Assembly: GCF_021869535.1 (NCBI RefSeq)
Contig: NW_026262712.1
Span: 65,782,001-65,846,000, forward strand
Length of the DNA stretch: 64,000 nucleotides
Direction of reading: 5' to 3'
DNA from: Mytilus californianus
Taxonomy: Eukaryota
This document shows, piece by piece, positions 16,236-41,371 of this stretch. The notes under the pieces are model-generated. The model was not told the origin of the DNA, ran no database searches, and saw only the letters and a list, made by a program, of their open reading frames with translations. The stretch's first letter is position 1. The number at the start of each line of letters is the position of its first letter. A program made the position numbers and the translations under genes.

Positions 16236-16278
16236 ACATCACTGAAGAGACATCAATTTTCGAAATCCGGATATGTGT
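16236..16278 (+). ncRNA. Hammerhead unit 3 (core intact, stem II mismatch)
   Basis: CTGAAGA-GACA tcaat TTTC-GAAA-TCCGGA-TA. Confidence 0.55.
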
Positions 16279-16773
16279 ACAAAAACATTTGCACCTTTTT
16301 TTTGCGGTATACCATCTTTTCCGCAAGTTTATTGTTTTCTGTTTAGTATTAAATTTATGATTAAGATCCATTCATTACATCGGTGATCCGTTTATTTGGC
16401 AATCGCCAATGGCAGTCAGCAGGGTTTAAGAACATTTGTTGTTCGACCTGTTAGTCAAATGCGTTTTGTTAAAATATACTTTTTCACTTTTTTGGTCTTT
16501 TGGAACATGTTGTTTGTGCTGTATTTAGACCCCTCTAACAAGAATTTTTTTTTGCATGCACACGTATAAAAATTGCGGTTTTTATCCAACGCAATCATAG
16601 GTTTGAATGTTGTTTTCAATTTAGGCTTGTTTATATTTTTTCGTTTGGGCTTGTATTATATTTGCCTTAGGGTTTAAATGATCCGTTCATCCTATTTTGA
16701 CTCCTCAAAGTTCAAGAGTCTATCCTAAATTGAGGTAAATTGTTGGGCTTTCAAAATACCGTTTTGATTCCTA

Positions 16774-16817
16774 ACATCAATGAAGATACATTGTTTGTCA
16801 AAATCCGGATATGGTGT
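16774..16817 (+). pseudogene. Hammerhead unit 4, core mutated
   Basis: ATGAAGA instead of CTGAAGA and AAAA instead of GAAA. Confidence 0.7.
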
Positions 16818-17304
16818 ACAAAAACCTTTGCACCTTTCGTTTGCGGTATATAATCTTTTCTGCAAGTTTATTGTTTTCTGTTTAGTATTAAATTTTAAAT
16901 TGTGATCCATTTATTACATCGGTGATCCGTTTATTTGGCAATCGCCAATGGCAGTCAGCAGGGTTTAGGAACATTTGTTGTTCGACCTGTTAGTCAAATG
17001 CGTTTTGTTAAAATATACTTTTTCACTTTTTTGGTGAAAATGTTGTTTGTGCTGTATTTAGACCCCTCTAACAAGAAATTTGTTTTGCATGCACACGTAT
17101 AAAAATTGCGGTTTTTATCCAACGCAATCATAGGTTTGAACGTTGTTTTCAATTTAGACTTGTTTATATTTTTCGTTTGGGCTTGTATTATATTTGCCTT
17201 CGGGTTTATATGATCCGTTAATCCAATTTTGACTCCTCAAAATTCAAGAGTCTATCCCAAATTGAGATAAATTGTATGACTTTCCAAAACCGTTTCGATT
17301 CCTA

Positions 17305-17347
17305 ACATCACTGAAGAGACATCAATTGTCGAAATCCGGATATGTGT
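17305..17347 (+). ncRNA. Minimal type I hammerhead ribozyme, unit 5 (intact core)
   Basis: ACATCA-CTGAAGA-GACA tcaat TGTC-GAAA-TCCGGA-TA-TGTGT. Confidence 0.75.
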
Positions 17348-17841
17348 ACAAAAACATTTGTACCTTTTGTTTGCGGTATATCATCTTTTCCGCAAGTTTA
17401 TTGTTTTCTGTTTAGTATTAAATTTATAATTAAGATCCATTTATAACATCGGTGATCCGTTTATTTGGCAATCGCCAATGGCAGTCAGCAGGGTTTAAGA
17501 ACATTTGTTGTTCGACCTGTTAGTTAAATGCGTTTTGTTAAAATATACTTTTTCACTTTTTAGGTCTTTTGGAAAATGTTGTTTGTGCTGTATTTAGACC
17601 CCTCTAACAAGAAATTTGTTTTGCATGTACACGTATAAAAATTGCGGTTTTTATCCAACGCAATCATAGGTTTGAACGTTGTTTTTAATTTAGACTTGTT
17701 TATATTTTTCGTTTGGGCTTGTATTATATTTGCCTTCGGGTTTATATGATCCGTTCATCCAATTTTAACTCCTCAAAATTCATGAGTCTTTCCCAAATTG
17801 AGGTAAATTGTATAGCTTTCCAAAAACCGTTTCGATTCCTA

Positions 17842-17885
17842 ACATCACTGGAAAGACATTATATGTCGAAATCCAGATATGGTGT
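17842..17885 (+). pseudogene. Hammerhead unit 6, core mutated
   Basis: CTGGAAA instead of CTGAAGA; stem III TCCAGA. Confidence 0.7.
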
Positions 17886-18376
17886 ACAAAAACATTTGCA
17901 CCTTTTGTTTGCGGTATATCGTCTTTTCTGCAAGTTTATTGTTTTCTGTTTAGTATTAAATTTAAAATTATGATCGATTTATTACATCGGTGATCTGTTT
18001 ATTTGGCAATCGCCAATGGCAGTCAGCAGGGTTTAAGAACATTTGTTGTTCGACCTGTTAGTCAAATGCGTTTTGTTAAAATATACTGTTTCACTTTTTT
18101 GGTGAAAATGTTGTTTGTGCTGTATTTAGACCCCTCTAACAAGAAATTTGTTTTGCATGCACACGTATAAAAATTGCGGTTTTTATCCAACGACGCAATC
18201 ATAGGTTTGAACGTTGTTTTCAATTTAGACTTGTTTATATTTTTCGTTTGGGCTTGTATTATATTTGCCTTCGGGTTTATATGGTCCGTTCAGCCAATTT
18301 TGACTCCTCAAAATTCAAGAGTCTATCCCAAATTGAGGTAAATTGTATGGCTTTCCAAAAACCGTTTCGATTCCTA

Positions 18377-18419
18377 ACATCACTGAAGAGACATCAATTG
18401 TCGAAATCCGGATATGTGT
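18377..18419 (+). ncRNA. Minimal type I hammerhead ribozyme, unit 7 (intact core)
   Basis: ACATCA-CTGAAGA-GACA tcaat TGTC-GAAA-TCCGGA-TA-TGTGT. Confidence 0.75.
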
Positions 18420-18914
18420 ACAAAAACATTGCACCTTTTTTTTGCGGTAAAACATCTTTTCCGCAAGTTTATTGTTTTCTGTTTAGTATTAAATTGATCA
18501 TTAAGATCCAATTATTACATCGGTGATCCGTTTATTTGGCAATCGCCAATGGCAGTAAGCAGGGTTTAAGAACATTTGTTGTTCGACCTGTTAGGCAAAT
18601 GCGTTTTATTAAAATATACTTTTTCACTTTTTTGGTCTTTTGGAAAATGTTGTTTGTGCTGTATTAAGACCCCTCTAACAACAAATTTGATTTTGCATGC
18701 ACACGTATAAAAATTGCGGTTTTTATCCAACGCAATCATAGGTTTGATCGTTGTTTTCAATTTAGACTTGTTTATATTTTTTCGTTTGGGCTTGTATTAT
18801 ATTTGTCTTCGGGTTTATATGGTCCGTTCAGCCAATTTTGACTCCTCAAAATTCAAGAGGCTATCCCAAATTGAGATAAATTGTATGAATTTCCAAAAAC
18901 CGTTTCGATTCCTA

Positions 18915-18957
18915 ACATCACTGAAGAGACATCAATTGTCGAAATCCGGATATGTGT
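18915..18957 (+). ncRNA. Minimal type I hammerhead ribozyme, unit 8 (intact core)
   Basis: ACATCA-CTGAAGA-GACA tcaat TGTC-GAAA-TCCGGA-TA-TGTGT. Confidence 0.75.
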
Positions 18958-19453
18958 ACAAAAACATTTGCACCTTTTTTTTTGCGGTATACCATCTTTT
19001 CCGCAAGTTTATTGTTTTCTGTTTAGTATTAAATTTATAATTAAGATCCATTTATTACATCGGTGATAAACTTATTTGGCAATCGCCAACGGCAGTCAGC
19101 AGGGTTAAAGAACATTTGTTGTTCGACCTGTTAGTCAAATGCATTTTGTTAAAATATACTTTTTCACTTTTTTGGTCTTTTGGAAAATGTTGTTTGTGCT
19201 GTATTTAGACCCCTCTAACAAGAAATTTGTTTTGCATGCACACGTATAAAAATTGCGGTTTTTATCCAACGCAATCATAGGTTTGAACGTTGTTTTCAAT
19301 TTAGGCTTGTTTATATTTTTTCGTTTGGGCTTGTATTATATTTGCCTTAGGGTTTATATGATCCGTTCATCCTATTTTGACTCTTCAAAATTCAAGAGTC
19401 TATCCTAAATTGAGGTAAATTGTTGGGCTTTCAAAATATCGTTTCGATTCCTA

Positions 19454-19497
19454 ACATCACTGAAGAGACATTGTTTGTTGAAATCCGGATATGGTGT
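19454..19497 (+). ncRNA. Minimal type I hammerhead ribozyme, unit 9 (intact core, full 6-bp stem I)
   Basis: ACATCA-CTGAAGA-GACA ttgtt TGTT-GAAA-TCCGGA-TA-TGGTGT (G-U at base of stem II). Confidence 0.75.
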
Positions 19498-19991
19498 ACA
19501 AAAACCTTTGCACCTTTTGTTTGCGGTATATCATATTTTCCGCAAGTTTATTGTTTTCTGTTTAGTATCAAATTTATAATCATGATCCATTTATTACATC
19601 GGTGATCCGTTTATTTGGCAATCGTCAATGGCAGTCAGCAGGGTTTAAGAACATTTGTTGTTCGACCTGTTAGTCAAATGCGTTTTGTTAAAATATACTT
19701 TTTCACTTTTTTGGACATTTTGAAAATGTTGTTTGTGCTGTATTTAGACCCCTCTAACAAGAAATTTGTTTTGCATGCACACGTATAAAAATTGCGGTTT
19801 TTATCCAACGCAATCATAGGTTTGAACGTTGTTTTCAATTTAGACTTGTTTATATTTTTCGTTTGGGCTTGTATCATATTTGACTCCGGGTTTATATGAT
19901 CCGTTCATCCAATGTTGACTCTTCAAAATTCAAGAGTCTATCCCAAATTGAGGTAAATTGTATGGCTTTCCCAAAACCGTTTCGATTCCTA

Positions 19992-20035
19992 ACATCACTG
20001 AAAAGACATTATTTGTCGAAATCCAGATATGGTGT
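19992..20035 (+). pseudogene. Hammerhead unit 10, core mutated
   Basis: CTGAAAA (G8 to A); stem III TCCAGA. Confidence 0.7.
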
Positions 20036-20377
20036 ACAAAAACATTTGCACCTTTTGTTTGCGGTATATCATCTTTTCTGCAAGTTTATTGTTTTCTGTT
20101 TAGTATTAAATTTAAAATTATGATCGATTTATTACATCGGTGATCTGTTTATTTGGCAATCGCCAATGGCAGTCAGCAGGGTTTAAGAACATTTGTTGTT
20201 CGACCTGTTAGTCAAATGCGTTTTGTTAAAATATACTGTTTCACTTTTTGGTGAAAATGTTGTTTGTGCTGTATTTAGACCCCTCTAAGATGAAATTTGT
20301 TTTGCATGCACACGTATAAAAATTGCGGTTTTTATCCAACGCAATCATAGGTTTGAACGTTGTTTTCGATTAAGACT

Positions 20378-20410
<33 letters not shown>
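20378..20410. repeat. (TA)n microsatellite at right edge of array
   Basis: Direct sequence. Confidence 0.95.
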
Positions 20411-21011: not shown

Positions 21012-22180
21012 ATGTCTGAAACCACAACAAAAACTGGATGATTTTATCAAACAACGCCCACCAGTCAATTAAATTCACATAAGAAATTTCAGACTCTAAA
21101 ATATCTTTCTTGGACACAACTACATCTATAAAAAGACCTCTACTGTAAACCTACAGATAAACATCAGTACCTTTCTCCCCAAAGCTTTCAACCACTGTAC
21201 AAAAAGTATCCCGTACTGTCAAGCTCTCAGTCTGAGAGTGAAGCGGATTTGCTCCTCTGAGGAGGTTGTCACTAAACGGTTACAGGAACTTCGCGGATTT
21301 TTGAAATGGGACATAGATAAGGGGTTTGCGCGTGCTAACAATAACAGCCGCAATGACCTATTACAGTACAAATAGAAAAGGCGAGCGAAATAGTTCCGTT
21401 TGTTTTAACATACAATCCCGCCTTTACTAACCTCTCCCGTTTGATCCGTGCCAATTGGCAGATTATTGCCAAACATCCAAAATTATCCAAGATCTTTCCC
21501 AAACCTCCTGTCTTAGCTTTTAGGAGACCAGCAAGTCTGAAAGACTTATTTGTGAGAGCTGGTGTCTCTTCTAATTAAAGCTCTTCAACAGCAGGATGGT
21601 GCAAGTTGTGTGGTAACAGACGATGTCTGACTTGCCAACAAATAATGAACACTCAAACATTTACTTGCCACTCCACTGGGTCCGTATACACTATATATAT
21701 TGCAATGTAACTTGCAAAACCCAGAATGTTTTATACCTTCACCTGGGCACGCCCACGCTGATCTCAAAAACCTTACCATCACTATCATAGACCACAACGA
21801 GAGTCGGTCAAGGGCCGACAGACTTGCTCGGGAAAGTTTTTGGATAAGGAAGTTAAGGACAGTTTCCCCAGAGGTCATTAATGAAAAACATAGAATGAGT
21901 CCCTACCATCACTTGTTTCCAGTAACTCAGGCTTCAGTACAGTACTTAGTTTTAAGGAATTTATTCCTCCTCCCAAACATCAATATTGAAAAGATTTACC
22001 AGCGTATTGATTCATGATAATTTGTATAACGATCAAGATTTCTATTACAGTGTGACTACCACATGTCAAGATAAGAACCATTTGACATCTTACTGATGAA
22101 GGATATTAGTTATCCGACATATTTAACATTTGTTCATGATTTTATTTTATTTTTGTGATGTTGTACTCTATTATATTTAT
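21012..22180 (+). pseudogene. 5'-truncated, decayed Penelope-like retroelement (RT C-terminus, Cys-rich linker, GIY-YIG endonuclease remnant, terminal hammerhead relic)
   Basis: Frame-broken AHQSIKFT*EISDSKISFLDT, DLYCKPTDKHQYL, IPY.QAL..KRICS, PFVLTYNP, FPKPPVLAFRRPASLKDL.VRA, C..CG..RCLTC, NVTCK, LTITIID..RLARESFWIRKLRTVSP..IN; CTGATGA-A-GGATA..TATCC-GACA at 22093-22119. Confidence 0.9.
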
Positions 22181-22739: not shown

Positions 22740-23610
22740 ATTTACGACTATACAAATTTGATAGATGTTCAATGACAATTTACAGCAACTTATTGTCTAG
22801 ATAATTAAAGTCACGCACGCTTCTATTGGTAAGCATATGAGTTTTAATATGAAAATAAGTAGATGTGGAATGATTGCAAAAACTATTTCACCAAAGTGTA
22901 AATTACATGTATGAAAGGGACAATAGATTCCGTACGACCTTGAACGATGATCACATCATAATCAGCAATGTTTAACAAGGAACAAATTCACACAATAGCA
23001 GTATAGAATTGAGTAAAGAACATTTTTCACCATATATGGTTATTACTTAAAGTCAGTTCCATGAATCAGAAGGAGTGTATAACTTATAATTCTAGAGGCC
23101 AAACAAAAGTCTAAAAAAATCTTTCGATTGGTCGATTTTGCTTTTCAAGAAGTACATAAAGCTTATACGATTAGAATAAAAAGTGTTACCTTGCTTCGAT
23201 TTTTGTCTGACACCTGGTAAGTTGTTAGTATATGTAATAAGGTTAACGCGGTAAATTTAATTAATGGTTTTAACCTAAGAAACGTAATTTTTTCATATTT
23301 TTTTATGTCATTTTGATATTTTAACTTCATTAATTGAATTGTTATTTGAACTGTTTGGTAATGTAGAAAAATATGTAGGTAAGTAAAAATAAAATTAACG
23401 ACTTTTCATTTATTTATGAAACCCCTTTTATTTGTTTAATTACATATTTTGACAACGTCTTCAAAGATTTTTTAAGCGGTCCCGGAAGCATCAACCCTTT
23501 TCCTGATTTAAACATTCTTGGCTTTCAAATACTCCGTTTTTAGTACTTGATAAAGATAAGTCAGAAAAACACTTTCGACGCACGACATTTATAAAGTCAT
23601 GTTTTCATTT

Positions 23611-24660
23611 TATAAGACATGGGTAAGCAAGGGGACCATAATCGTCGAATCTAAAAGGGTAATCATCTGGCTGATCCGGATCCTCTTACAACCCCCAAAC
23701 AAATTTTGACACCAAATATTGAGGTGAATAAGGCCGTAGTCGTTTGCACAGGGAACACACCTTTTGTTTATCTACTTAACACCGAAATTGCACCTATTCG
23801 TTAACCTTTTTACGGGTTAATTCAAAAACGGTGTTTCATTATCATGATAAAACTGCTTTGGACATCTCGATTGGTCCTTTACGAGGATATTTTACTCTGT
23901 GAGAGAAATCGAACTTCTGTATCGTTTCATTAAAAAAAAGTTGATTTCAATAGAATCATTCATAATAATACGATAATACAATACAATAATACAGAATACA
24001 ATAGCTTGGCCTAGGAAGGGGTCAACTAAACCATAAACAAATATTGAAATGCTAAGTGTAACACCTGCAACATAAGCATTCAGAAATGAAGATGCTCACA
24101 ACCTAAAATTGGTATATCTACTAAAATACATTTGTAATGGACCACAAATATAGATGAACATCTAACAAACATCAAAATGAACAAAAAAATCATGAGATGA
24201 TGAAGGGGGTGGAGGGCGGGAAAATTTATAAAATCTAAAACAAAATATTGTTTACAAAATATCGATCAATAGATCATAAAGAATGTGTAATTAGATATAT
24301 TGTGTAGAAACTGACCAATGGTCATCCAGCCAAAAGATCGTAATGCAGGGGTAAATATTATAAGACATAGGTAAGCAAGACGACCCTAATCGTCGAATTT
24401 AATAGGGTAATCATCTGGCTGATCCGGATCCTCTTACTACCCCAAACAAATTTTGACACCAAATATTGAGGTGATTAAGGCCGTAGTCGTTTGCACAGGG
24501 AACACACCCTTTGTTTATCAACTTAACACCGAAATTGCAGCTATTAGTTAATCTTTTTACAGGATAATTCAAAAACGGTGTTTCATTATCATGATAAAAC
24601 TGCTTGGGACATCTCGATTGGTCCTTTACGAGGATATTTTACTCTGTGAGAGAAATCGAA
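23611..24660. repeat. Local ~300-bp direct duplication (23611-23913 and 24359-24660)
   Basis: TATAAGACAT(G/A)GGTAAGCAAG...GTGAGAGAAATCGAA repeated at a 747-748 bp offset with scattered substitutions. Confidence 0.9.
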
Positions 24661-26329: not shown

Positions 26330-26371
26330 ACACCAGACGCGCCTTTCCTCTTCATAGGAATCATCAGTAAT
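26330..26371 (-). pseudogene. Degenerate hammerhead motif whose upstream stem I arm is interrupted by the LTR insertion
   Basis: Minus strand CTGATGA-TTCC tatga AGAG-GAAA-GGCGCG-TC-TGGTGT; the host repeat continues after 30091. Confidence 0.55.
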
Positions 26372-27578
26372 TGTAAAGAAGTGAAATTTTCACTTCTGAG
26401 TTCTTTTAGTAAGGGGGACAATCAAATAGATCTGTCAATTGGGCGTCAAACAAAACTAAATAAAAATTTGCATTTAATAATACCACAACCACAAGACAAA
26501 CACAAAACATAAATATACACATATGAAACAACCTCTCCACGACCTCTCTTCTATCTCACATAGACAATGACAAATACACGGAACTAAATACACTTAACTA
26601 AAAGTTAAAATTAAAAGTAAATAAATAAATTAGTCCATCACAGTCCATAAATCACAAGTCTATATCAATCCAGAAATCTCAAAGGTTGTTCTCGTTTGAT
26701 CCGAATTACTATACTGTTCAAATTTACTGTCTGTCAACTTGACAAATATTGAAAAACCAATACTTTGACAACATAACGTTAAATACTTCAGTCTCTGGGA
26801 CAAACTGTCAAACAAGTTTCTGCTATGTTTTAAATTGTAATTGTCCCGAAACAAATTCACTGACGGACTATTTAACCACACAGATATTCAGGTTGTTGTA
26901 ATACTTAATACTTGAAAACTATCTGTTCCATTTAAACTATCAAATGTTAACCATACACACAGTATATATTTATCCTCATCTGAGATTCAACTTTATATAT
27001 AGGAAATTGTCTCATTTTACTTATCACTCCTTTCTTTTAATGATCTAAAATACTTCCATAACTCAACAAGTCCCCTGGGAAAGAAACAAAACACAATTTT
27101 AAATAACGGACCGATTTAATCCCGAATAAACATAATTATTTGACAACCGTGCGCGCCATAATTACAATATGACAAACAAAATTTGATATCTCGTGCAAAT
27201 ATTTGAAACAGAAGACATAAGGGCGGGGCATGGTGTGTTTGTGTGACAAAACCTACCTGGGAGTTCTTTATTGTCCTGATGGACAAAATATTAATGAATT
27301 CTCCTGAACTGATCATTCCTGATATAATATCTGCCCTGACAATAGTCAAACTCCAACTCCAAGTTCCAGTCAGTTTTCAACATCTGACTTCAACACTGTC
27401 CAGGTGTTATACTGACAACACCTTATCTCAAGACTAGTGTTTCTAAATTAACCTGCCTAACCAGTTTCTCACCTTCACATTACCTGTTTGTCAAACTTGA
27501 TTACTTTTGTTCTATTTATAAATCACTAAGATTTAAATCCAGGTAACACTCAAAGAAGGATAACTCAAAAACTTTACA
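26372..27578 (-). repeat. 3' LTR (1207 bp)
   Basis: TGTAAAG...CTTTACA; matches 28880-30086 at a constant 2508-bp offset, one substitution seen. Confidence 0.95.
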
Positions 27579-27590
27579 ATCCTCCCCTCT
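27579..27590 (-). other. Polypurine tract
   Basis: Minus strand AGAGGGGAGGAT abutting the 3' LTR. Confidence 0.85.
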
Positions 27591-27755
27591 AAGGAGACAA
27601 AATAACATTTTTGTCCAACCCAAACACTCTCTCATACCCGATACAAAATAACCTACCTGTCTACATCATTTAGACAGAATCTTATAACTGCCAAGAACAA
27701 CATGCATAAACATATATACAACTATACACACTACCTGGAGTATTTCAGGGGACTT

Positions 27756-27887
27756 CTATTCCGCCAACCTGGACAACGCATCTGCCACAATGTTCAACTT
27801 ACCAGGCACATAGGAAATTCTAAATTTTAATTCCTGTAGTGTCAGACTCCAACATAATAATCGCTGATTACTCATCTTCATTCTTAC
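27756..27887 (-). pseudogene. C-terminal tip of Pol RNase H
   Basis: VRMKMSNQRLLCWSLTLQELKFRISYVPGKLNIVADALSRLAE*, matching the RH-end motif RW.L.LQE..F.I.Y.PGK.N.VADALSR. Confidence 0.85.
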
Positions 27888-27891
27888 CTTT

Positions 27892-28032
27892 TTACGTACC
27901 TTTCTTTTCAGTGCAATCATAACTTAAATGTCCTTGTTTATGACAAATGTAACAAGTTTTAGGTTTACTGAAATCCTTACCCTTTCCTAGGTCCTTCTGT
28001 AAGCCTCTGGTTTGACCACCATTATTACCTGA
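27892..28032 (-). other. In-frame Gag tail with CCHC zinc knuckle downstream of the TAA
   Basis: SGNNGGQTRGLQKDLGKGKDFSKPKT-CYICHKQGHLSYDC-TEKKGT*; CX2CX4HX4C at 27913-27954 in the gag frame. Confidence 0.85.
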
Positions 28033-28815
28033 TTAAGGTTTCATCTTGAAAGCACCATCTGATACAAGACTCTCAATCTTGTGAGCCACTTGATAGGATT
28101 CAGCTAAATCAACAACTTCATGAGCAGATTTAGGCTTGTGTTCATTAACCCAAAGCCTTAAATCCGTACTACAATTTTGGAGTAATTGCTCACGCAACAT
28201 CAAATCTAATAGTTTTTCATGACTGTTATCAACAACCTCACGTTCACACCAATGTTCTAAATACCTTTCTAACTTAACCCTGAATTCTCTAAATGACTCG
28301 TCTTTTTCCTGAATAGCAGACCTAAATTTTTCCCTGTAGGCTTCTGCAGTTAACTCATACCTTTTTAGAATTGCATCTTTAATCTTGTCATAATTACCAC
28401 CATCAGCATCACTTAAACAAGAGTATGCCTCTAATGCCTTACCACTCAATAATGGCACAATACGAACTGGCCATTCAGACTTTGCCCATTTATGCAAGGC
28501 TGCTAGTTTCTCAAAAGACTTCAAAAAAACATCTGGGTCTTGACCTTCAATGAATTTTGGTAACTTACTATATTTCTGATCTCCTTTGCTAGTAACAGGT
28601 GCTGCAACACCTAAAGCTTGTTGCACCGCTATCTCTTTTTCCTTAATCTCAAGTTCACGCATGCGTATTTCTCTTTCCATCTCTGCACGTTTCAAATCAC
28701 GATCTGCTGCACGTTCTTCGCGCTCCGTCGCTTGTATTTCCTTCCACAGGGTCAGACAATCTGTAACAGACCCCCTTTTTTCTACTAACTCGGACATCCA
28801 TTTAGGCATGTCCAT
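28033..28815 (-). CDS. gag: Gag with SCAN-like capsid domain (260 aa, ends before the zinc knuckle)
   Basis: Coiled-coil N-terminus, LPKF.EGQDPDVFL.SFE..A....W....W...L.G.A, then YREKFR...ESF.EF...L..Y..HW...L...EQLL.....LR.WV.EHKP.S..E..LAE.Y (SCAN-like). Confidence 0.88.
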   Translation of the reverse strand: MDMPKWMSELVEKRGSVTDCLTLWKEIQATEREERAADRDLKRAEMEREIRMRELEIKEKEIAVQQALGVAAPVTSKGDQKYSKLPKFIEGQDPDVFLKSFEKLAALHKWAKSEWPVRIVPLLSGKALEAYSCLSDADGGNYDKIKDAILKRYELTAEAYREKFRSAIQEKDESFREFRVKLERYLEHWCEREVVDNSHEKLLDLMLREQLLQNCSTDLRLWVNEHKPKSAHEVVDLAESYQVAHKIESLVSDGAFKMKP

Positions 28816-28859
28816 GACAAAGTTGAATTTCAGTCAACTAGTATAAACCCTACTGACAG

Positions 28860-28877
28860 ATCCCACCGTGGATGCCA
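28860..28877 (-). other. Primer-binding site (tRNA 3' complement; isotype uncertain, Arg-like)
   Basis: TGGCATCCACGGTGGGAT starting 2 nt after the 5' LTR. Confidence 0.75.
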
Positions 28878-28879
28878 AA

Positions 28880-30086
28880 TGTAAAGAAGTGAAATTTTCA
28901 CTTCTGAGTTCTTTTAGTAAGGGGGACAATCAAATAGATCTGTCAATTGGGCGTCAAACAAAACTAAATAAAAATTTGCATTTAATAATACCACAACCAC
29001 AAGACAAACACAAAACATAAATATACACATATGAAACAACCTCTCCACGACCTCTCTTCTATCTCACATAGACAATGACAAATACACGGAACTAAATACA
29101 CTTAACTAAAAGTTAAAATTAAAAGTAAATAAATAAATTAGTCCATCACAGTCCATAAATCACAAGTCTATATCAATCCAGAAATCTCAAAGGTTGTTCT
29201 CGTTTGATCCGAATTACTATACTGTTCAAATTTACTGTCTGTCAACTTGACAAATATTGAAAAACCAATACTTTGACAACATAACGTTAAATACTTCAGT
29301 CTCTGGGACAAACTGTCAAACAAGTTTCTGCTATGTTTTAAATTGTAATTGTCCCGAAACAAATTCACTGACGGACTATTTAACCACACAGATATTCAGG
29401 TTGTTGTAATACTTAATACTTGAAAACTATCTGTTCCATTTAAACTATCAAATGTTAACCATACACACAGTATATATTTATCCTCATCTGAGATTCAACT
29501 TTATATATAGGAAATTGTCTCATTTTACTTATCACTCCTTTCTTTTAATGATCTAAAATACTTCCATAACTCAACAAGTCCCCTGGGAAAGAAACAAAAC
29601 ACAATTTTAAATAACGGACCGATTTAATCCCGAATAAACATAATTACTTGACAACCGTGCGCGCCATAATTACAATATGACAAACAAAATTTGATATCTC
29701 GTGCAAATATTTGAAACAGAAGACATAAGGGCGGGGCATGGTGTGTTTGTGTGACAAAACCTACCTGGGAGTTCTTTATTGTCCTGATGGACAAAATATT
29801 AATGAATTCTCCTGAACTGATCATTCCTGATATAATATCTGCCCTGACAATAGTCAAACTCCAACTCCAAGTTCCAGTCAGTTTTCAACATCTGACTTCA
29901 ACACTGTCCAGGTGTTATACTGACAACACCTTATCTCAAGACTAGTGTTTCTAAATTAACCTGCCTAACCAGTTTCTCACCTTCACATTACCTGTTTGTC
30001 AAACTTGATTACTTTTGTTCTATTTATAAATCACTAAGATTTAAATCCAGGTAACACTCAAAGAAGGATAACTCAAAAACTTTACA
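28880..30086 (-). repeat. 5' LTR (1207 bp)
   Basis: See 3' LTR. Confidence 0.95.
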
Positions 30087-31463
30087 GTAATGCTCGAACC
30101 AAAACAGTTGACTGGCCAAATCAAATAGAAAGTTGAGGAGCATTAAAAACCGAAAATTCCAAAAAGTTGTGACAATTGCGGCTAATGCAATCTATGTCTA
30201 GGGTAGAAAAGCCACAGTGTTTCGAATTATTTAACATTTTATGAACATCAATTGTTGACAATGAGGGTTTACCTATAGAATGGTGATACTCTTGTTGACG
30301 AAACAGTGACTTAGTTACCTTCGGGAACGTAAACGTAGGTTCCACACCAAAATATACGTCAAATACCCTATTCTTATTTTATATTTTATTTTTTTTGTGT
30401 TTTGCTATAAACATACTTATCAGGACCGAGAGTGCTCTGGTGTATTATCATTCGGATACACACACAAAACGATATCGGCAAGGCACAATCAAAATTAAAA
30501 ATCTTATGTGAGAGACACATGAGTTTGTGCCATTTTTGTTACCATTCAAATACGTACTGTGAAAGATATACTTCATTTCTATCATTTGTAAGTGTTAAGT
30601 CATTATTTAAAATTTTAACGTCATGCTGTTTCAATTTCTAAATTACAAATTAACACCCGAACAGTTGTATCAATGACATCATGATAAAAACATTAACGGT
30701 ACCAACTTTTACTGCCCCATATACGCATTTTGAAAATACAGGTCTATTCAGTGATGATTGAAGCCAAACTATTTCAAAATCATTCACCTTATTTAAACAT
30801 TAGATTCCTAATATAGCCAAAAATGGAACACAAGTAGATCCAAACGCGACCAAGGAATATGACTTTTTTAATTCTAAAATGATTTTCTTGGATTTATAAC
30901 ACCCGATTTCAATAAACTAAATCCGTATATTTATAATGGACTGGTGATTCCACTGTGATTAACAGTCCTCCAGCAGAGGTATCGACCATAATTGATAATA
31001 TTGATTAAATTCATCTTCATGCTTTCAATACATAATTGTGTTCATGATCATGCTCCGTATGTTATAGTTGTATTCTTCTATAAGGGTTAACACAGATCCA
31101 ACTATATAAACAAATAAGAAAACAATGCGTATAAATTAGTTTTGATTCAGTATTACGTTGCTATATTGCTGCTGTATGTGCATTGATATTTCACTTTTAT
31201 TCTACAATTGATGGCTATAGGATACTTATTGGCTAGTTTTTTTAAACTGTAGGAAAATGAGATTTTAAAAAATTATTACAGGGTCGATAACGGTGCTGTG
31301 GAATCAGATTCTGGGAGAAATCTCTGTCCAAAAGAAATTAAAACAATGAATAAGTTAATATCTAGATAATTATTCGTAATAGTGAACTTTTAACATATAA
31401 GAAGATAAATTCCAGCCATATTACAAATTCCAATTTCAATTAATCATTTACGACATTTTCAGA

Positions 31464-33126
31464 ATGGAAGAAGTAGAATCTTGTGCTGGATGTCTTCGTT
31501 TTGATGACAAAAAAGATGCAAAGTTTTGGTGTGTGAATTGTAGCGAATTTGTCTGCAATTCCTGTGCTAAATCGCATAAAAAATTACCAACACCTCATGC
31601 CATCTTAGCAAAGGAACACTTATGCATCAGTTCAGATCTTCTAAGACTTGGAGGAAATTGTGAAACCCATCGCTCACAAAAATATGTTTTTTTTTTGCTG
31701 ACAACATGATCAGCTTGCTTGTGACAAATGTAAGTCAGAATCACATCAAACCTGTTCATCTATCGTTTCCATTGAGAAAGCAGCTGAAAATGTCAGGGAC
31801 GGAAGAGTTTTATCTGATTTAGAAAAGAGGATTGATAACCTTGGTGAAAGAATAGGGGTAATTCTAAAGAATAAAACAAATCCAATTGGACATGACACAA
31901 GGGTTAAAACCGAAATAAAGAAGACAGTTCATGATGTAAAGCAACAATTAGTACTTCACTTTGAAAAACTAGAGAACCAGTTGTGTGATGATATCGATAT
32001 AATGGTCCCAAAATATGGCCAATCAGAGTCCAGAGATCTGAAAAAATTACAAAAAACGCTTAAAACGGTGGATGGTTGGAAAAAAGATCTAAAATCTCTG
32101 AAAAAAATCACGTCTGAAACCTATCTTTTCCAAGTCATCAAATTTATCGATAAAGAGGTTCATAATCAAACATCGGAAGTCGTAAAGTGTACAGCAAACA
32201 AACAAATATTAACATTTAAACCTTCAAAAGCGGTATTGAACTATCAGACAGTATTTCCATCACTAGGAAAATTAGCAATTAAACCATTGCTAAATACAAC
32301 GACAATGGACCCAGAGAGAAAACAACAAGCCCAAGTCCCTTTGCGTATCCCTAGGAAAAGACTTACTTTTGTTCGCTCATTCAAATCAACCGACTTGAAC
32401 ATAAACGATAGATTATCCAGCGGATGTTTCATGTCAGCGAATAAGCTACTACTAAAGACGCAATTAGGACTTGTCCTTTACATTTGTAATCTAGACAGAT
32501 CCGATTCAAAACAAATTAGGTTAAGTTGCCAGCCAGAATGTATTGCGAAGTTAGACAATAACCGAGCTTTGGTTTCATCCGTTGAAAATTACATACAGGT
32601 CATTAATATTTCAAGTAGAAAACCAGAAACAAAAATCATGATTAAGGGAAAACATTGCACAGATATGTGCAGCCTAGATGAAAAGATCTGGGTAAGAAGC
32701 GATCATAATACCCTCATAGCAGTTGATATCGATGGAAACGAATTGACCAAGATAATAACATTATTTGACCCCAATGATATTTGCGTACATCGATCTGGAG
32801 ATCTTTATTTCATTTCAGAAAGAAATGCTATATATGCAATGGGTTCTGACGAAAAACCATATCGAATTTCCCGACTTCCAAGGCAACATAATCCCGATGG
32901 CGTCCATCTTTCGGGGTTGGTTGTAGTGGACGATGATTTATTTGTCGCAGAGATGACTGATAATAACATATATAAAATTTCAATTGATGACGGGAATCAC
33001 GCGATAGTTCTAACAGAAGATGATGGTATCAAAGAACCGATCGGACTTTCTTACAATAGTGAAACAAAAGAGTTATTGGTCGTAAATAACCGTGGACTTT
33101 CTATTTACTTTTTTAAAGTAATATGA
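31464..33126 (+). pseudogene. RING-less TRIM-like gene (2 B-boxes, coiled coil, NHL/TolB-like beta-propeller) with +1 frameshift and adjacent TGA
   Basis: AG acceptor at 31461-62 before ATG; B-box1 C..C...A..WC.NC.E..C..C...H; T10 run (31687-96) shifts frame; C*QHDQLACDKC..H..C B-box2 with TGA at 31699-701; then open to TGA at 33126. Confidence 0.85.
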
Positions 33127-35105: not shown

Positions 35106-36563
35106 ATTATACGGGGTAAATACAGTACCCTGTTGGGAAACATTCGCTTTGTAGTTTGCAGTGATTTTCGCATTAATTCTTACCCTGACCCCCAACCTTA
35201 CCATGCAATACTTTTATTAGGAATTAACGAAACTTAAAGATATCATGTAGCATTAAGTTATAAAAAAATGGGTATAAAACACACACAAAACACGGTACAA
35301 ATTCGATTAATCAAGTATTATTACATTGCTTGCAATGAATTATCGTGATTTCTCAGTGAAATAAAATCAATAATTTTACATGTGAAATAAACTCGGTTAT
35401 TTCACTCCTCTGACGTCATACAACAATAGGTGTTGTCAAGACGTTGTCGATGACGTTGCATAAAAGCAATTGTGAATGAGTAGACAAAGATATACAGTTG
35501 GAAAGCAGGTCACGGTTTGACCCCAAGTCTATCAGCAACAATAGAGTCACGTGACCGTGAAAATTCAGCAAAACTACGCATGAAACAAATCTCATTTTTA
35601 CTCACTAAAACACCACTGTCATGATAAAAACTTATTGATCAAAATAATCTTGAATATAAATAGTTTTAACTCGTCAAAACTTACGCATCAACTAAAAGTC
35701 CTTTTTTTCTTCATTTCATCTTCAAACATGAAGTTTGTGTGAAAATTGTAAAGTCTCCTGATCGAAAAATCTAAATATTTTCGAGGAAACTAAAAATGAT
35801 GGGCTGAATTTAAATCTAATAAAGCATCTCATTAAGACAAACACTCGATATGAATATCTAGGCAATAGAGTTTTGGATACGCAAACGTCAAGTTATTTTC
35901 AACTCGAGGCGGTGGTTTTTTGTCCTATTTGTGCAAGTAGTTATCTCCCCTTGATATCAGCGGTCAAAAATAAAAACCCAGCAAAATGAATAAAAAGGAG
36001 TTTACTTTACAAAAATAAAGAAGAAACTAAAAGAAATTTGATTTACAACTATATTATTATAATATTAAGAAGAGATACTTCCCTACTTTTCAGAGAAGTG
36101 TAATGGTGGTCACTTTGTTTACTTGTTATTTGTTCTATTTATTTGGGGAAATTGGTTAATGTTAGTATTATTTATAGTTCCGTAACTCTTTCTTCCGAGA
36201 CCGGCCATGTAATTATTCTTGTCGGGACTTCCTGCTTCTTGCACGTGATTGACTTCCGGCCTGGCCGGGCTCGTTGTCTCTAGGAACTATAAGTATGACG
36301 TCACTCACCGGGTTCAGGGCAGTTTACACTTAGGATTTGAAATGAGCAGACGCTCATACCGTTTGGATTGCACATATGGAACTTTAAAATGACAAGTAGA
36401 CTAGCCACCACTGTATATTTATTATATGTAAATTATATCCAACCATATATGTCTTTTAAATAAACATCTTTATGTTTACGTGGATTTATAGTTTGTCTAA
36501 TATCCCAGAACTTGGGTAGACAACGGGAAAACGAAGCCAGTGGAAACTCCACTCCCGTTACAT

Positions 36564-36581
36564 TGGGGGCTCGTCCGGGAT
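36564..36581 (+). other. Primer-binding site complementary to tRNA-Pro 3' end
   Basis: TGGGGGCTCGTCCGGGAT, the canonical 18-nt tRNA-Pro PBS. Confidence 0.9.
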
Positions 36582-38187
36582 ATATTTTAGGACAATAATC
36601 AAAACAAACGTATTGTTTGTACATTATTTCTGCAATATGGCTGGAATAAAAGGGATTTTTGTATCCCTAGGAGTCAAAATCGAACAGTTTATTGTTCGTC
36701 TTCTTATCATTTCCGTTGTTTGTGCCGGTCCTACAATGACCAGTACTGAATAAAATATTGGTTTGTACAATAATATAATAAAAGGTGGCTTACCTTCAGA
36801 AATTGAAATTAGAAATCCACCAGGGAAACTTAAATTTGGACCACAAAGTAAACCTTTTGTTCACGTTCCAAAGAACAAATGGTAAAAATGCAGTTCTTGT
36901 ATAGCAGGAAAAACAAACAAATCATGTTTGTACTCATGTACACAGCATCAAAATTAAAAATATAGCTGTATTTGACTGTAATTTAAAGCAAAGTATGGCT
37001 TTTCAATTTTCCGGAAGTCCGCGATTTATCACGCCATGTTTACAAAATGACGTCATATTTTTGACGTCAAAACACATGACATCTAAGGAATGTGTGTATG
37101 GAGGTACCAATAGGGAATACTCATTGTCGTTCTAATTATGAAAAAACTGTTTTATTTCTTAGTTCCGTTTAATTGGTACGTTTTTATGTTTATTGTCATA
37201 ATTGGATTTGGAAAGTCAAATAAATTGTTTGATTATACTTGAAATTGTTTTTGATTAAAAAGTACATTTTGTACTTGCATTTCTGTCACTTTTGTCTGCA
37301 TCTATGTCTTGTCAGTGTGGATGTTATAGCAATTATTTAGTTTTCTTGCATGGAAAGGAGGGAATTAACAATACACAAAACTTCAAAGTTATATCGTTTG
37401 TAAAAGGCTATATTGTGCCATCATGGATTATATTCTGCAAAATTTGTTCGGTTTATATTAATCTTAAAAAAACGGATTAAAAGTACAGTTTTGTACTAGA
37501 ATATGTTTTATATAACATCATCATGATGATCATTTTTACTTTGGTCTTTTGGAAATAGACTGAATTAATTTCAGTTTGGTGGGGTTGTTACTTGGAGGGA
37601 AAATAATACTGAATATTTTCAGTCGTTAAGCGATACGTTAATAAATGTAGAAATTAATTGTGGATGTTGCCAGAATTTGGATTAAAATGACATTTGTTGT
37701 CATTCAGCTGGAATAGGGTTGTCTTGTACGAGTAGTGCTGGATTATTGCTAAATAGAAGAAAGTACACTCAGTATGTTAGCTGTGGGAAGATGCTTTCGG
37801 TGGTACATACAGGCAAATTTGGAAATACCTTATGTGCTAGAGAATGGCACTAGGATGGGTATGGACTATTGGTTAGTCTTGTTGCGTATGTATTTTTACT
37901 ACCTAGTTATTGGTTCACCATGGGTATGCTGTCTGCATGGTTAAGGATATTGTTTTGGGATTACTGGAATACAAGGGATGATTTATTATATAGTCTAATT
38001 GTTTTATATGACTAACTAATTTTTGAAAATATTTGATAAACAAACAATCAGTTTGTATGGATTCCAGTAGAGAAATGTGTGTTCTATATGTTTATATTAA
38101 TTCCTTGGGCTATATGCTTTCGGAGACGTTTACAAATACGTATTGGGGCACCCGATCAAGTGGTGCAATGCTTGTGTATTTAGACTA

Positions 38188-38393
38188 CTGTAAATTCAGA
38201 AATTATTGCGAGGTTTTTATTATTGCGAAAAATGCGACAGAGTTGTAAACGCAATAATTTAAACTCGCATTTTGAAATATTTTATTTGAATTAAACAGGA
38301 TTTTTCTCAAAACCGAAAAAATTAAAATCGCATTTCAGTCTAAAATGATAAAATCGCAATAATAAATGCACGCAATAATTTCTGAATTTACAG
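38188..38393. mobile_element. Tc1/mariner-type MITE nested in the LTR element
   Basis: Perfect TIR CTGTAAATTCAGAAATTATTGCG / CGCAATAATTTCTGAATTTACAG with TA on both sides. Confidence 0.88.
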
Positions 38394-41371
38394 TATTATA
38401 GACTCTTGGTGAGTCAGGATTTTATAAGAAGAATGTGCTTCTTAAGTATTCCAGTGTCTGACAGAATATGGGAGATAAAACTGAAATTGTTTCAGTGCGT
38501 GGATAGCTGGCCACAATGAGGGAACATTGAAATTTATATTGGCCTTTTTGCCGATAACTTTGAACGTAACTAAACCACATAGAATTAAATGTTGGGGAAC
38601 ACTTACTTGGACTACTTTACAGATTTGGAAAATCTACTGGACGACTTTTACCATATTTACCTTCCTGGAACCTTGGACAATATGTGTACCTGGATGCTTC
38701 GCTCGAGCTTTAAAATTGGATTCCTTACTCCGTGATGATGTCTCGTGATGTATTTGTGACTTTTGAACATTTAGTTAAAGACCGTTGAATATCTTGAACT
38801 ATTTTTCAAATTATTTATTGACATTAACAGTAAATTAATTTGTTGATAACTATATGTGTCTGTATTTGGAATTTCGGTAAGTATACCTGACCGATCTTAG
38901 GACTAATGTGTGGGCACATTATGTCTTAAGAGAGGGGGAGTGTTATGGTGGTCACTTTGTTTACCTGTTATTTATTCTATTTATTTGGGGAAATTGGTTA
39001 ATGTAAGTTTTATTTATAGTTCCGTAACTCTTTCTTCCGAGACCGGCCATGTAATTATTCTTGTCGGGACTTCCTGCTTCTTGCACGTGCCTGACTTCCG
39101 GCCCGGCCGGGCTCGTTGTCCCTATAAACTATAAGTATGACGTCACTCACCGGGTTCAGGGCAGTCTACACTTAGGATTTGAAATGAGCAGACGCTCATA
39201 CCGTTTGGCTTGCACATATGGAACTTTAAAATGACACGTAGACTAGCCACCACTGCATATTATTATATGTAAATTATATCCAACCATATATGTCTTTTAA
39301 ATAAACATCTTTATGTTTACGTGGATTTATAGTTTGTCTAATATCCCAGAACTTGGGTAGACAACGGGAAAACGAAGCCAGTGGAAACTCCACTCCCGTT
39401 ACAGAAGGATTATAGTTAAAAATTAAAAGAAAAAAAATTGATAAAAATTAAGCAATTCACCTAGAAACTTGGTGAGATTTACTTTGTAATTTTATACTGG
39501 GATATGGGATCACTACTACCTAGCTGAATTGATATTTAAATTAGCTCTTTGGGTTGAAATTTACTTTGTAATCTTTATAATGGGATATTGGATCACTCCT
39601 AGTAGAAATTTGTTTAATTACATTTATTAAACAATGTTTAATGCAATAAAACATACTTCATACAATTTAAATAATCTTTCTGAAATAAAAATAATAAATA
39701 CTGATCATTTATATTTTATAATCTAAAAAGTTGGACCAAGAGTCCCAATAGTTTCTTCAATTTAGCTCAATCCTATGTTTCTTAGTTGAACAGTACAGTA
39801 CTGCCTACAAGATATCCTACACAAAAAGGATAAATTTAACAAAAACATTGACAGAAATTCTGTAAAAAATAATACTTAGAATTATAAGTGACATAATTTT
39901 GAATTTTAAAATCATTATTATTGTAAAATTCAATTATTAGATAAGTTAGCACAGCTAGTAGCTCTTGCCAAATTTCTCAGTGTATTTTAGATTATAAAAG
40001 TAAAATTTTTGAAAAAAATAAAATTGGCTTCTACTCTTCAGGTTGCTGTATCTGTATCAGCTGGTATAAATATTTATAAACATTGTATATATTGTATACT
40101 TTTACCTTAATAATTGGATATTTATATCACAAATGACCGGGACAAATCTTGTGCCTTTTACTTAATGATTGTAAAATTTGACAAGAATTTGCCATTTGGA
40201 TTAGAATAAATACAATTTTGTAAGAAACCATCTCTATGAATTAAAGTTCGTGTTTGACTTGATAAGTTAGTTTTTTGCACTTATTAGTGTGGCTTATTTA
40301 GTAAATAGATAATCAGATAAGTAAGGTTTTTAACTTATAAGTGTAATTAACTGACCTTCATTTCCTTTTTCATAGGTTTTCTCCTCCAGAAATTTCATTG
40401 CAATGCATTTTCTCTTGCTATTTTTTTGTGTTTTTGTCCATCCATAGGCTATCATTAATTTGTCAGATTTGTTTCCAGTATGAATGAAACTCAATTTTCA
40501 AACTCAATAAAGATGATATTTGTATCACTTTTCCAATGTGTAAATTTTCACTATGCACATGACCCTGACACATATATTGTTAACGTTATGTGACGTATGT
40601 TGAAAAAGAAAACAATGTCACGGTCAACTTGTGTAGGGGATCAAAAAGGGTATTAGCTACCTTAAAATGAAGGTATCGTATGGAATTGTGAAAAACAAGA
40701 ATTTTTAATCATAATTTCATTCATATCTCTAACAAGATAAGTATTTTAGAGTACTTGGAAACAGGTACAATGAAAAGAAGTTGAACATTCACTGTTTTAA
40801 ACTAGAAACGAAGCCAAAACCTGCTACAAATTGACATGACTGGTGGTCACTAAAATTGTTGTATTAGAGTAAAAAATGATGGCTTCAAAATTGTGAAGAA
40901 ATTTGAAATAGGTTACCCGGTTTCATTTAAAATTTTTAACGTTCTTTTCCGTATCTGGATACGCAAACGTCAAGTTATTTAAATTCGATGTTTTTGGCGA
41001 ACACAAAAAAAATGGCTGATAATTTTTAGAACGGACAGGATAAAGTAATAGCAAATAAAAGTTATTTTCGACAATTTTTCTATGTCGTATTGAAACTATA
41101 TTGTTCACAAAACCTACAAACTTTAAAAATCAATTATAATAAAAGCATGACAAGTTGAAAAATATAGTTTGAATGACGATGTTTTAACCGATTGATTTCG
41201 CGGACTTTTTTACGTCACCGACGACTGTAGCGCCACCTAATTAATCCCCCCTGCTATTGTTGCTGATAGAGCTTGACGACAACGGACGTATCCAAGAACT
41301 TGCTTTCCAACTGATAGTTCCTTCATTTTTTCTCTAATTCTACTAAATATCCCATTGTCAATGTAATAAAA

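What the first reader, a model, noticed from the sequence alone, without database searches (positions are those of the whole stretch)
26372..30086. Very young gag-only Gmr1-like LTR element (TR-GAG-like) with a SCAN-domain capsid
Seen: 1207-bp LTRs differing at one position found by eye (near 27139/29647), intact TSD, PBS and PPT, but only 1.3 kb internal: Gag, then a junction near 27890 into the last ~43 codons of RNase H, ending ...ADALSRLAE* ~170 bp before the PPT. Established: RNase H at the extreme Pol C-terminus and a SCAN-containing Gag are hallmarks of Gmr1-like elements (PR-IN-RT-RH order), the proposed source of the vertebrate SCAN domain; gag-only TR-GAG elements are described mainly in plants. 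Inference: near-identical LTRs suggest the deleted form itself transposed recently, using Pol in trans while supplying its own capsid.
Basis: partly seen in the sequence, partly recalled or inferred. Interest (0 to 1): 0.7.

Follow-up and report, generated by a model that had tools for sequence, protein, structure and literature searches.

The report
Young gag-only mussel LTR retrotransposon
This is a recently inserted, internally deleted copy of a Gmr1-like (SCAN-capsid) LTR retrotransposon in a mussel-type genome; it keeps only a shortened gag gene, so it is a well-preserved but ordinary defective mobile element that must borrow its enzymes from full-length relatives.

Summary
Window 26372-30086 (minus strand) is a complete 3,715-bp LTR element. 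It has two 1,207-bp LTRs with one mismatch, TG..CA ends, a 5-bp target duplication (GTAAT), a PBS and a PPT.

The 1,301-bp interior holds a 260-codon gag whose C-terminal lobe is a SCAN domain (Pfam 6e-14; modelled fold matches ZNF24 and PEG3 SCAN domains). A CCHC zinc knuckle follows, then the last 42 codons of RNase H.

The closest full-length relative (P0218, 1,438 aa) has the order SCAN-Gag, IN, RT, RH-at-the-end, which is the Gmr1 order. It aligns by residues 1-320 and 1397-1438 on either side of a junction at 27884/27883. About 1,076 codons (the PR region, IN, RT, most of RH) are missing.

- An in-frame stop separates the capsid part from the zinc knuckle.
- A second in-frame stop precedes the junction.
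- The RNase H remnant is in another frame.

Three Mytilus coruscus gene models form a supported clade with this gag. One ends at the same stop and one ends in the same out-of-frame read of the RNase H remnant. This suggests a propagating gag-only lineage, but the DNA could not be fetched. It is a new member of a known kind, of modest interest.

The parts
26367..26371 (.). Target-site duplication, GTAAT (3' side in element sense)
   Evidence: the same 5 bases lie directly outside both LTRs
26372..27578 (-). 3' LTR (element sense), 1,207 bp, ends TG..CA
   Evidence: 1,206 of 1,207 bases identical to the other LTR; the mismatch is at 27139
27579..27590 (-). Polypurine tract AGAGGGGAGGAT abutting the 3' LTR
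   Evidence: read directly from the sequence
27756..27884 (-). Remnant of the RNase H C-terminus (42 codons plus stop, ends ADALSRLAE), out of frame with gag
   Evidence: 93% identical to residues 1397-1438 of the 1,438-aa polyprotein P0218; in long relatives with the IN-before-RT order this stretch is the extreme C-terminus
27883..27884 (-). Deletion junction. The Gag/NC-frame homology ends and the RNase H-frame homology begins, with a 2-nt overlap. About 1,076 codons (PR region, IN, RT, most of RH) are missing
   Evidence: tblastn of P0218 against the element; domain positions
27892..27894 (-). Second in-frame TAA in the gag frame, just after the zinc knuckle
   Evidence: relatives have a sense codon here
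27913..27954 (-). CCHC zinc knuckle (CX2CX4HX4C) of the nucleocapsid part, cut off from the gag ORF by the upstream stop
   Evidence: translation; aligns with the knuckle of P0001, P0197 and P0218
28033..28035 (-). In-frame TAA ending the gag ORF between the capsid and nucleocapsid parts
   Evidence: P0001, P0003, P0008 and P0218 read through this position. M. coruscus P0004 ends at the same residue
28036..28815 (-). gag ORF, 260 codons: long N-terminal helix, capsid N-lobe, SCAN-type capsid C-lobe
28081..28344 (-). SCAN domain (Gag residues 158-245)
   Evidence: PF02023, E 6e-14, 52.1 bits against a cut-off of 27. PEG3 and ZNF24 SCAN chains. TM 0.76-0.80 and rmsd 2.4 A to solved SCAN domains
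28859..28877 (-). Primer-binding site, TGG... 2 nt after the 5' LTR, complementary to a tRNA-like 3' end (...GATCCCACCGTGGATGCCA)
   Evidence: read directly. The tRNA was not identified: no tRNA gene in the window
28880..30086 (-). 5' LTR (element sense), 1,207 bp. Candidate TATA at about 29509 and AATAAA/ATTAAA motifs at about 29780, 29628, 29549 and 28986 (motifs only)
30087..30091 (.). Target-site duplication, GTAAT (5' side in element sense)

Best explanation

Its parent was a roughly 6.9-kb Gmr1-like Ty3/gypsy element. That parent encoded one polyprotein: Gag with a SCAN-type capsid C-lobe, a CCHC knuckle, a PR region, IN, RT, and RNase H at the very end. A single internal deletion of about 3.2 kb joined the region just after the zinc knuckle to the last 42 codons of RNase H, in a different frame.

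All the cis parts needed for a replication cycle remain:
- both LTRs;
- the PBS and leader;
- the gag region, where packaging signals usually lie;
- the 3' end of pol with the PPT.

Shown:
- the anatomy of the element;
- the origin of both halves of the interior;
- the Gmr1-type order of the nearest full-length relatives;
- the youth of the insertion.

Inferred:
- The RNA of the already deleted form was packaged, reverse-transcribed and integrated by proteins of a full-length relative (P0218-like). Two nearly identical intact copies of that relative exist in public assemblies.
- The deleted form is a lineage of its own, shared with Mytilus coruscus.
- The encoded protein is capsid without nucleocapsid. 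At most it could co-assemble with the helper's Gag.
For: Structure:
- LTR pair, target duplication, PBS and PPT.

Gag:
- SCAN domain by Pfam, by PDB sequence search, and by an AlphaFold model with pLDDT 81.8 searched with Foldseek.
- Foldseek also matched the Arc, PNMA2 and dArc1 capsids at probability 0.92-0.99, though all its E-values are 0.009 or higher and none reaches 0.001.

Parentage:
- P0218 residues 1-320 and 1397-1438 flank the junction.
- P0218 has SCAN 156-243, IN 578-924, RT 1063-1222 and RH 1287-1414 of 1,438 aa.
- P0202, P0144, P0174, P0190 and the partial ORF of metagenome contig L001 show the same order; L001 ends within RT.
- In every long relative with that order, the remnant matches the last 40 or so residues.
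- The Gmr1-type order is defined in the literature.

Host:
- The best Gag hits are Mytilus coruscus and other bivalves.
- The window has about 32% G+C.

Lineage:
- The window Gag groups with M. coruscus P0002, P0004 and P0007 (support 99/97), sister to the autonomous P0218/P0266.
- P0004 ends at the window's stop position.
- P0002 ends in NEDE-stop. That is exactly the gag-frame read of the RMKMSN codons of the RNase H remnant in the window.

Possible helper:
- P0218 and P0266 are 99.9% alike and lie on two contigs.
Against: - No second DNA copy with the same junction was seen.
- The M. coruscus evidence rests on annotated protein models. These may be spliced predictions, and they carry gaps.
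- The nearest full-length relative is only 82% identical in Gag, and no closer one is in the database. So the actual helper, and whether it shares LTR, PBS and PPT, is unknown.
- Two in-frame stops show that coding capacity is not preserved intact.
- One insertion with near-identical LTRs is also what a deletion made during the very reverse-transcription event that created this copy would give.
Confidence: 0.7

Rival explanations
1. Dead on arrival. A full-length RNA was the template. Reverse transcriptase jumped from the RNase H end to the region behind the zinc knuckle during the same replication cycle that produced this insertion. The junction is then unique and the deleted form never replicated as such.
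For: Only one copy is in the window. Near-identical LTRs and an intact target duplication fit this just as well. Internally deleted gene models of other kinds occur among relatives, such as P0062, P0048, P0141 and P0182, which suggests that deletions arise often.
Against: M. coruscus P0002 ends in the same out-of-frame read of the RNase H remnant, and P0004 ends at the same stop. These models group with the window Gag apart from the autonomous form. The two in-frame stops would have had to be present in the full-length parent or arise within a span that left one LTR mismatch.
Confidence: 0.18
2. Post-insertion deletion. A full-length element inserted here and later lost 3.2 kb of its interior by a chromosomal deletion.
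For: It cannot be excluded from one locus. The junction shows no added bases.
Against: With one LTR difference in 1,207 bp there was little time for a deletion plus two nonsense changes. The M. coruscus coincidences would then be chance.
Confidence: 0.07
3. Assembly artefact. The two ends of a full-length element were joined by a collapse or mis-join.
For: None directly. Read support could not be examined.
Against: The junction joins unrelated sequence (zinc-knuckle region and RNase H end), with no repeat to cause a collapse. There are no N runs in the window. The same reading across the junction appears in an independent M. coruscus protein model.
Confidence: 0.03
4. A domesticated host gag/SCAN gene rather than a mobile element.
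For: The SCAN domain ORF is intact over 260 codons.
Against: The ORF sits between near-identical LTRs with a target duplication, PBS and PPT. There is no zinc-finger array or other host domain. An element this young needs no selection to keep its ORF open.
Confidence: 0.02

Closest known systems
Gmr1-like Ty3/gypsy elements (Gmr1 of Atlantic cod and relatives in fish, frogs and reptiles)
   Same: The Gag has a SCAN-type capsid C-lobe. The parent type has IN before RT and RNase H at the very end of Pol, as the literature describes. The nearest full-length relatives show this order. Fish, sea-urchin and amphioxus proteins of the same architecture are found as more distant relatives, some named GIN1.
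   Different: This copy has lost the PR region, IN, RT and most of RH. The host is a bivalve, whereas the papers held in the library treat Gmr1 mostly as a vertebrate or deuterostome group. Placement of its RT in a tree with the Gmr1 reference could not be done, because this copy has no RT and no reference sequence was at hand.
TR-GAG elements of plants (Coffea, Arabidopsis, Triticeae)
   Same: Both are LTR elements with PBS and PPT whose only coding capacity is gag, regarded as semi-autonomous and dependent on a partner for enzymes.
   Different: This is an animal host and a different lineage. The origin from a known autonomous type is still traceable, with a 42-codon RNase H remnant. Gag is cut short of its zinc knuckle. 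Multi-copy status is not shown here.
Autonomous mussel element represented by P0218/P0266 (unnamed, ENA assemblies)
   Same: Gag is 82% identical and the RNase H end 93% identical. It is the sister clade in the Gag tree.
   Different: It is full length (a 1,438-aa polyprotein). Its DNA, LTRs, PBS and PPT could not be compared.
Vertebrate SCAN domains (ZNF24, PEG3, MZF1, Zfp206)
   Same: The fold is shared: TM 0.67-0.80 and rmsd 2.4-3.3 A over about 85-90 residues. Sequence similarity is detectable.
   Different: Here the domain is part of a retrotransposon capsid, not a host transcription factor. Identity is 20-27%.

Membership tests
LTR retrotransposon (structural definition) | Two direct long terminal repeats with TG..CA ends, flanked by a short target-site duplication | tested here: met
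   1,207-bp LTRs, 1 mismatch, TGTAAAG..CTTTACA, GTAAT on both sides
LTR retrotransposon (structural definition) | PBS next to the 5' LTR and a polypurine tract next to the 3' LTR | tested here: met
   TGG-initiated 19-nt tRNA-like complement 2 nt from the LTR; 12-nt purine tract abutting the LTR. The priming tRNA was not identified
Gmr1-like clade of Ty3/gypsy | Integrase upstream of reverse transcriptase, with RNase H at the C-terminal end of Pol | tested here: inconclusive
   IN and RT are deleted in this copy. The RNase H remnant is followed directly by a stop and 165 bp later by the PPT, which fits RH-last. The closest full-length relatives (P0218, P0202, P0144, P0174, P0190) all have IN, then RT, then RH-last; the L001 ORF has the same IN-then-RT order but ends within RT
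Gmr1-like clade of Ty3/gypsy | Gag capsid C-terminal lobe recognisable as a SCAN domain | tested here: met
Gmr1-like clade of Ty3/gypsy | RT/RH groups with the Gmr1 reference in a phylogeny | not tested
   This copy has no RT and no Gmr1 reference sequence was available from a tool. Indirect evidence only: fish and amphioxus (GIN1-named) proteins of the same architecture are among the relatives
TR-GAG (gag-only non-autonomous LTR elements) | Gag is the only coding capacity and no Pol enzyme domain is present | tested here: met
   only gag. The 54-aa ORF holding the RNase H remnant has no Pfam match and is out of frame
TR-GAG (gag-only non-autonomous LTR elements) | A family of copies that propagated in the deleted form (same internal structure, different insertion sites) | tested here: inconclusive
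   There is one copy in the window. M. coruscus models P0002, P0004 and P0007 share the clade, the stop position and the read across the junction, but no DNA could be fetched
SCAN domain, PF02023 | Score above Pfam's gathering threshold, and the SCAN fold | tested here: met
   52.1 bits against 27. TM 0.76-0.80 to 3lhr, 4bhx and 4e6s
Host SCAN zinc-finger or domesticated gag gene | A single-copy host gene without LTRs, joined to host domains | tested here: not met
   the ORF is flanked by LTRs, PBS, PPT and a target duplication, and has no other domain

The most novel reading that the evidence does not exclude
The gag-only form may be a long-lived lineage shared by several Mytilus species whose master copies already carried the stop before the zinc knuckle. 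It would then spread while encoding a capsid-only, SCAN-type protein that co-assembles with the Gag of the autonomous element. That protein could act as a parasite of the helper's particles or as a brake on them. It would be a free-standing SCAN/capsid gene, of the kind that could precede host capture of the domain.
Probability: 0.15. Interest if true: 0.6.

Novelty: new member of a known kind. Interest (0 to 1): 0.3.

Why it matters
Internally deleted LTR elements are common, so the locus itself is ordinary. It has modest value in three ways.

- It is a very clean example, with every cis part intact and an exact junction, of a gag-only derivative in an animal. The category has been named and studied mainly in plants.
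- It shows, with many relatives, that SCAN-capsid elements of Gmr1 order are abundant and apparently active in bivalves (Mytilus, oysters, Solemya) and in a gastropod. The papers held in the library discuss the group mostly for vertebrates.
- If the deleted form is a lineage shared among Mytilus species, it gives a natural system to ask how a capsid-only gag affects its helper. The insertion is also likely to be polymorphic, so it could serve as a marker.

Tried and rejected
No eukaryotic DNA around related proteins could be fetched, so the junction and LTRs of other copies could not be compared.
- The metagenome scan gave only three distant loci. L001 was useful for domain order only.
- The viral contigs and genome-contig scans found nothing.
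- Pfam found no family for the 54-aa ORF holding the RNase H remnant. The 43-residue stretch cut from it was therefore sent to the large representative search.
- A third word search for a full-length relative closer than P0218 found none; the next is 55% identical.
Its resemblance to Ser/Leu-type tRNA ends is from memory only.
- Members of the clusters around P0218 and P0221 were checked for gag/RNase H chimeras. They are plain fragments of full-length copies.
- The Batillaria models P0141 and P0182 and the models P0062 and P0048 also join Gag or IN to an RNase H end. They may be spliced gene predictions, so I did not count them as evidence.
- Programmed read-through of the gag stop was considered and not pursued, because nothing tests it here.
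The pieces separated by stops were searched apart. The consensus lines that the alignment tool prints by itself were not used.
Full report
**Observation**

A direct repeat with an offset of 2,508 bp delimits two LTRs of 1,207 bp, at 26372-27578 and 28880-30086. They differ at one position, 27139 T versus 29647 C. The LTRs begin TGTAAAG and end CTTTACA. The five bases outside each end are GTAAT. Nothing else in the 64-kb window resembles the LTR or the interior, and the window has no N.

The coding sense is on the minus strand:
- The 5' LTR is 30086-28880.
- Two bases further on lies a 19-nt PBS starting TGG (28877-28859).
- The gag ATG is at 28815.
- A 12-nt purine tract (27590-27579) abuts the 3' LTR.
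- The interior is 1,301 bp.

**What the interior encodes**

The gag ORF (28815-28036, 260 codons) matches Pfam SCAN (PF02023) at residues 158-245, with E 6e-14 and 52 bits against a cut-off of 27. A sequence search of the PDB finds the SCAN domains of PEG3 and ZNF24.

An AlphaFold model made with 35 natural relatives has mean pLDDT 81.8. It shows three parts:
- a long N-terminal helix (residues 17-67);
- a disordered linker;
- two helical lobes.

The C-terminal lobe superposes on solved SCAN domains at TM 0.76-0.80 and rmsd 2.4 A. The two lobes together match the Arc, PNMA2 and dArc1 capsids at probability 0.92-0.99, and more weakly MLV and HIV capsid proteins. All Foldseek E-values are 0.009 or higher and none reaches 0.001. 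So 'SCAN-domain capsid' is correct.

Reading on in the gag frame gives, in order:
- an in-frame TAA at 28035-28033;
- 46 more codons that include a CCHC knuckle (27954-27913);
- a second TAA at 27894-27892;
- after seven more codons, a third stop.

In another frame, 27884-27759 encodes 42 residues ending ADALSRLAE. A stop follows, and the PPT lies 165 bp further on.

**Where the two halves come from**

The word search with Gag found 46 relatives. The named ones are bivalve proteins from Mytilus coruscus, Solemya velum and Saccostrea cucullata. The window's 32% G+C fits a mussel.

Pfam did not recognise the 54-aa ORF that holds the RNase H remnant, and the word search cannot reach longer proteins from so short a query. 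I therefore sent a 43-residue stretch of it to the representative search. Of 166 hits, the best single-stretch matches sit at the extreme C-termini of their proteins. The long ones, P0144, P0174 and P0190 (1,540-1,570 aa), have the order SCAN, IN, RT, RNase H-last. A CCHC knuckle and an aspartyl protease were matched, weakly, only in P0144. A JGI metagenome contig (L001) with a Gag 34% identical to this one has one ORF with SCAN, CCHC, protease, IN and RT in that order.

A cluster member, P0202 (1,430 aa), has the same architecture. It matches the window Gag at 55% and the remnant at 68% over its last 40 residues. Using P0202 as the query gave many full-length bivalve polyproteins. Among them, P0218 (1,438 aa) is much the closest:
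- Its Gag is 82% identical.
- Its last 42 residues are 93% identical.
- Its domains are SCAN 156-243, IN 578-924, RT 1063-1222 and RNase H 1287-1414.

tblastn of P0218 against the element aligns residues 1-320 to 28815-27883 and residues 1397-1438 to 27884-27759 in another frame. The junction is therefore at 27884/27883. The missing part is residues 321-1396, about 1,076 codons or 3.2 kb. It covers the PR region, IN, RT and most of RNase H. A full-length parent would be about 6.9 kb.

The order IN before RT with RNase H last, combined with a SCAN-coding gag, is how the literature defines Gmr1-like elements.

**Age**

One difference in 1,207 bp is a divergence of 0.08%. No measured rate for this host was available. 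With assumed rates of 1e-9 to 1e-8 per site per year, this corresponds to roughly 40,000 to 400,000 years, with a wide Poisson error. This is inference, not measurement.

**Did the deleted form itself propagate?**

Direct evidence would be other DNA copies with the same junction. I could not obtain them, for three reasons:
- The window holds one copy.
- The collection scans brought no close locus.

Indirect evidence exists. Three M. coruscus gene models (P0002, P0004, P0007; accessions) are 85-92% identical to the window Gag, closer than the autonomous P0218 at 82%. In a maximum-likelihood tree of 20 Gag sequences, the window and these three form a clade with support 99/97, sister to P0218/P0266. 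The rows were chosen from the closest hits, and all other hits were left out.

- P0004 ends at exactly the residue where the window ORF stops.
- P0002 reads through that position and ends in NEDE followed by a stop.
- In the window, NEDE-stop is the gag-frame reading of the codons that encode RMKMSN at the start of the RNase H remnant.
- In full-length relatives the gag frame continues quite differently at that point.

So an M. coruscus copy seems to enter the RNase H remnant in the same shifted frame shortly after the nucleocapsid region. These are annotated models with internal gaps and may be spliced predictions. I therefore treat this as suggestive. I put about 0.7 on a propagating gag-only lineage, 0.18 on a deletion made in the replication cycle that created this copy, 0.07 on a later chromosomal deletion and 0.03 on mis-assembly.

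**Mechanism**

The copy keeps what a template needs: LTRs, PBS, leader and gag region, and the 3' end of pol with the PPT. It has no enzymes, so reverse transcription and integration must be done by proteins made elsewhere.

P0218 and P0266 are intact, 99.9% alike and lie on separate contigs, so a recently active full-length relative exists in public data. Whether it lives in this genome and shares the cis signals is unknown. No closer full-length protein is in the database.

The ORF ends before the zinc knuckle, so the product would be a capsid protein without the nucleocapsid part. If made, the protein could at most join particles built by the helper. If P0004 truly shares the stop, the lineage has spread without an intact Gag-NC of its own.

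**Comparison and novelty**

The element works like the TR-GAG elements of plants, which are gag-only and semi-autonomous. It descends from the Gmr1-like kind. Membership in that clade by RT phylogeny was not tested.

Internally deleted LTR elements are ordinary, so I rate this a new member of a known kind.

A by-product may be worth noting. SCAN-Gag polyproteins with IN before RT and RNase H last are numerous in bivalves, and a Batillaria (gastropod) gene model also carries the Gag C-lobe and the RNase H end. Sea-urchin and fish relatives have the same architecture; amphioxus, acorn-worm and sea-cucumber relatives were found as well, but not all of them have a recorded SCAN match or a full-length Pol. 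The papers in the library discuss Gmr1 mainly for vertebrates, and a survey of mollusc LTR elements mentions it only in its background section.

**Handling notes**

- Pieces separated by stops were searched separately.
- I do not state what change would restore any reading frame.
- No contig looked human.
- One functional assay is listed under referred steps.

Noticed in passing
window 14985-20386: Tandem satellite with a unit of about 537 bp, roughly ten copies, 87-94% alike. Tandem Repeats Finder missed it because its longest period is 500.
   Followed up: no
window 36099-39403 (+): A second small LTR-like element. It has 465-bp direct repeats 96.6% alike with TG..CA ends, and GAAG on both flanks. 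A purine run precedes the right repeat and a TGG-start motif follows the left one. The interior is about 2.4 kb with no long ORF.
   Followed up: partly
window 31401-33126 (+): A gene-like stretch 1.3 kb from the element, on the opposite strand. Cys/His-rich B-box-like motifs at 31401-31706 continue in another frame into a 474-codon open frame. By eye that frame has a coiled-coil part and an NHL/beta-propeller-like end. The 381-aa ORF within it has no Pfam hit.
   Followed up: partly
window 57669-58100 and 58942-59385 (+): ORFs with weak B-box matches (E 1.6e-5) and weak beta-propeller matches (E 1.7e-4). Probably a second TRIM-like B-box/propeller gene.
   Followed up: no
window 21100-22014 (+): Open frames that by eye resemble the end of a Penelope-like or other retroelement ORF with a GIY-YIG-type tail. 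Not searched.
   Followed up: no
window 3492-3736 / 6950-7193 and 23607-23913 / 24355-24660: Two further pairs of direct repeats, 245 bp at 98% and 307 bp at 94% identity. No obvious TG..CA ends or target duplication; probably copies of short interspersed repeats.
   Followed up: partly
window 49125-52417 (mostly - strand): A cluster of five ORFs of 143-216 aa, four on the minus strand and one on the plus strand, without convincing Pfam matches.
   Followed up: no
protein P0278 (MCS5550181.1): A 536-aa fragment of a mussel-type SCAN-Gag polyprotein is deposited as a protein of a Gammaproteobacteria MAG on a 2-kb contig. This looks like host DNA binned into a symbiont or environmental genome.
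   Followed up: no
protein P0296 (Crassostrea gigas XP_019930229.1): The first 279 residues are 41% identical to this Gag, and the rest carries PKD and REJ domains. It is either a host gene that captured a gag or a chimeric gene model.
   Followed up: no
proteins P0141/P0182 (Batillaria attramentaria), P0062, P0048: Gene models in other animals also join a SCAN-Gag or IN part to the last 40 or so residues of RNase H. They may be recurrent internal deletions that keep the 3' end, or spliced predictions across elements.
   Followed up: partly
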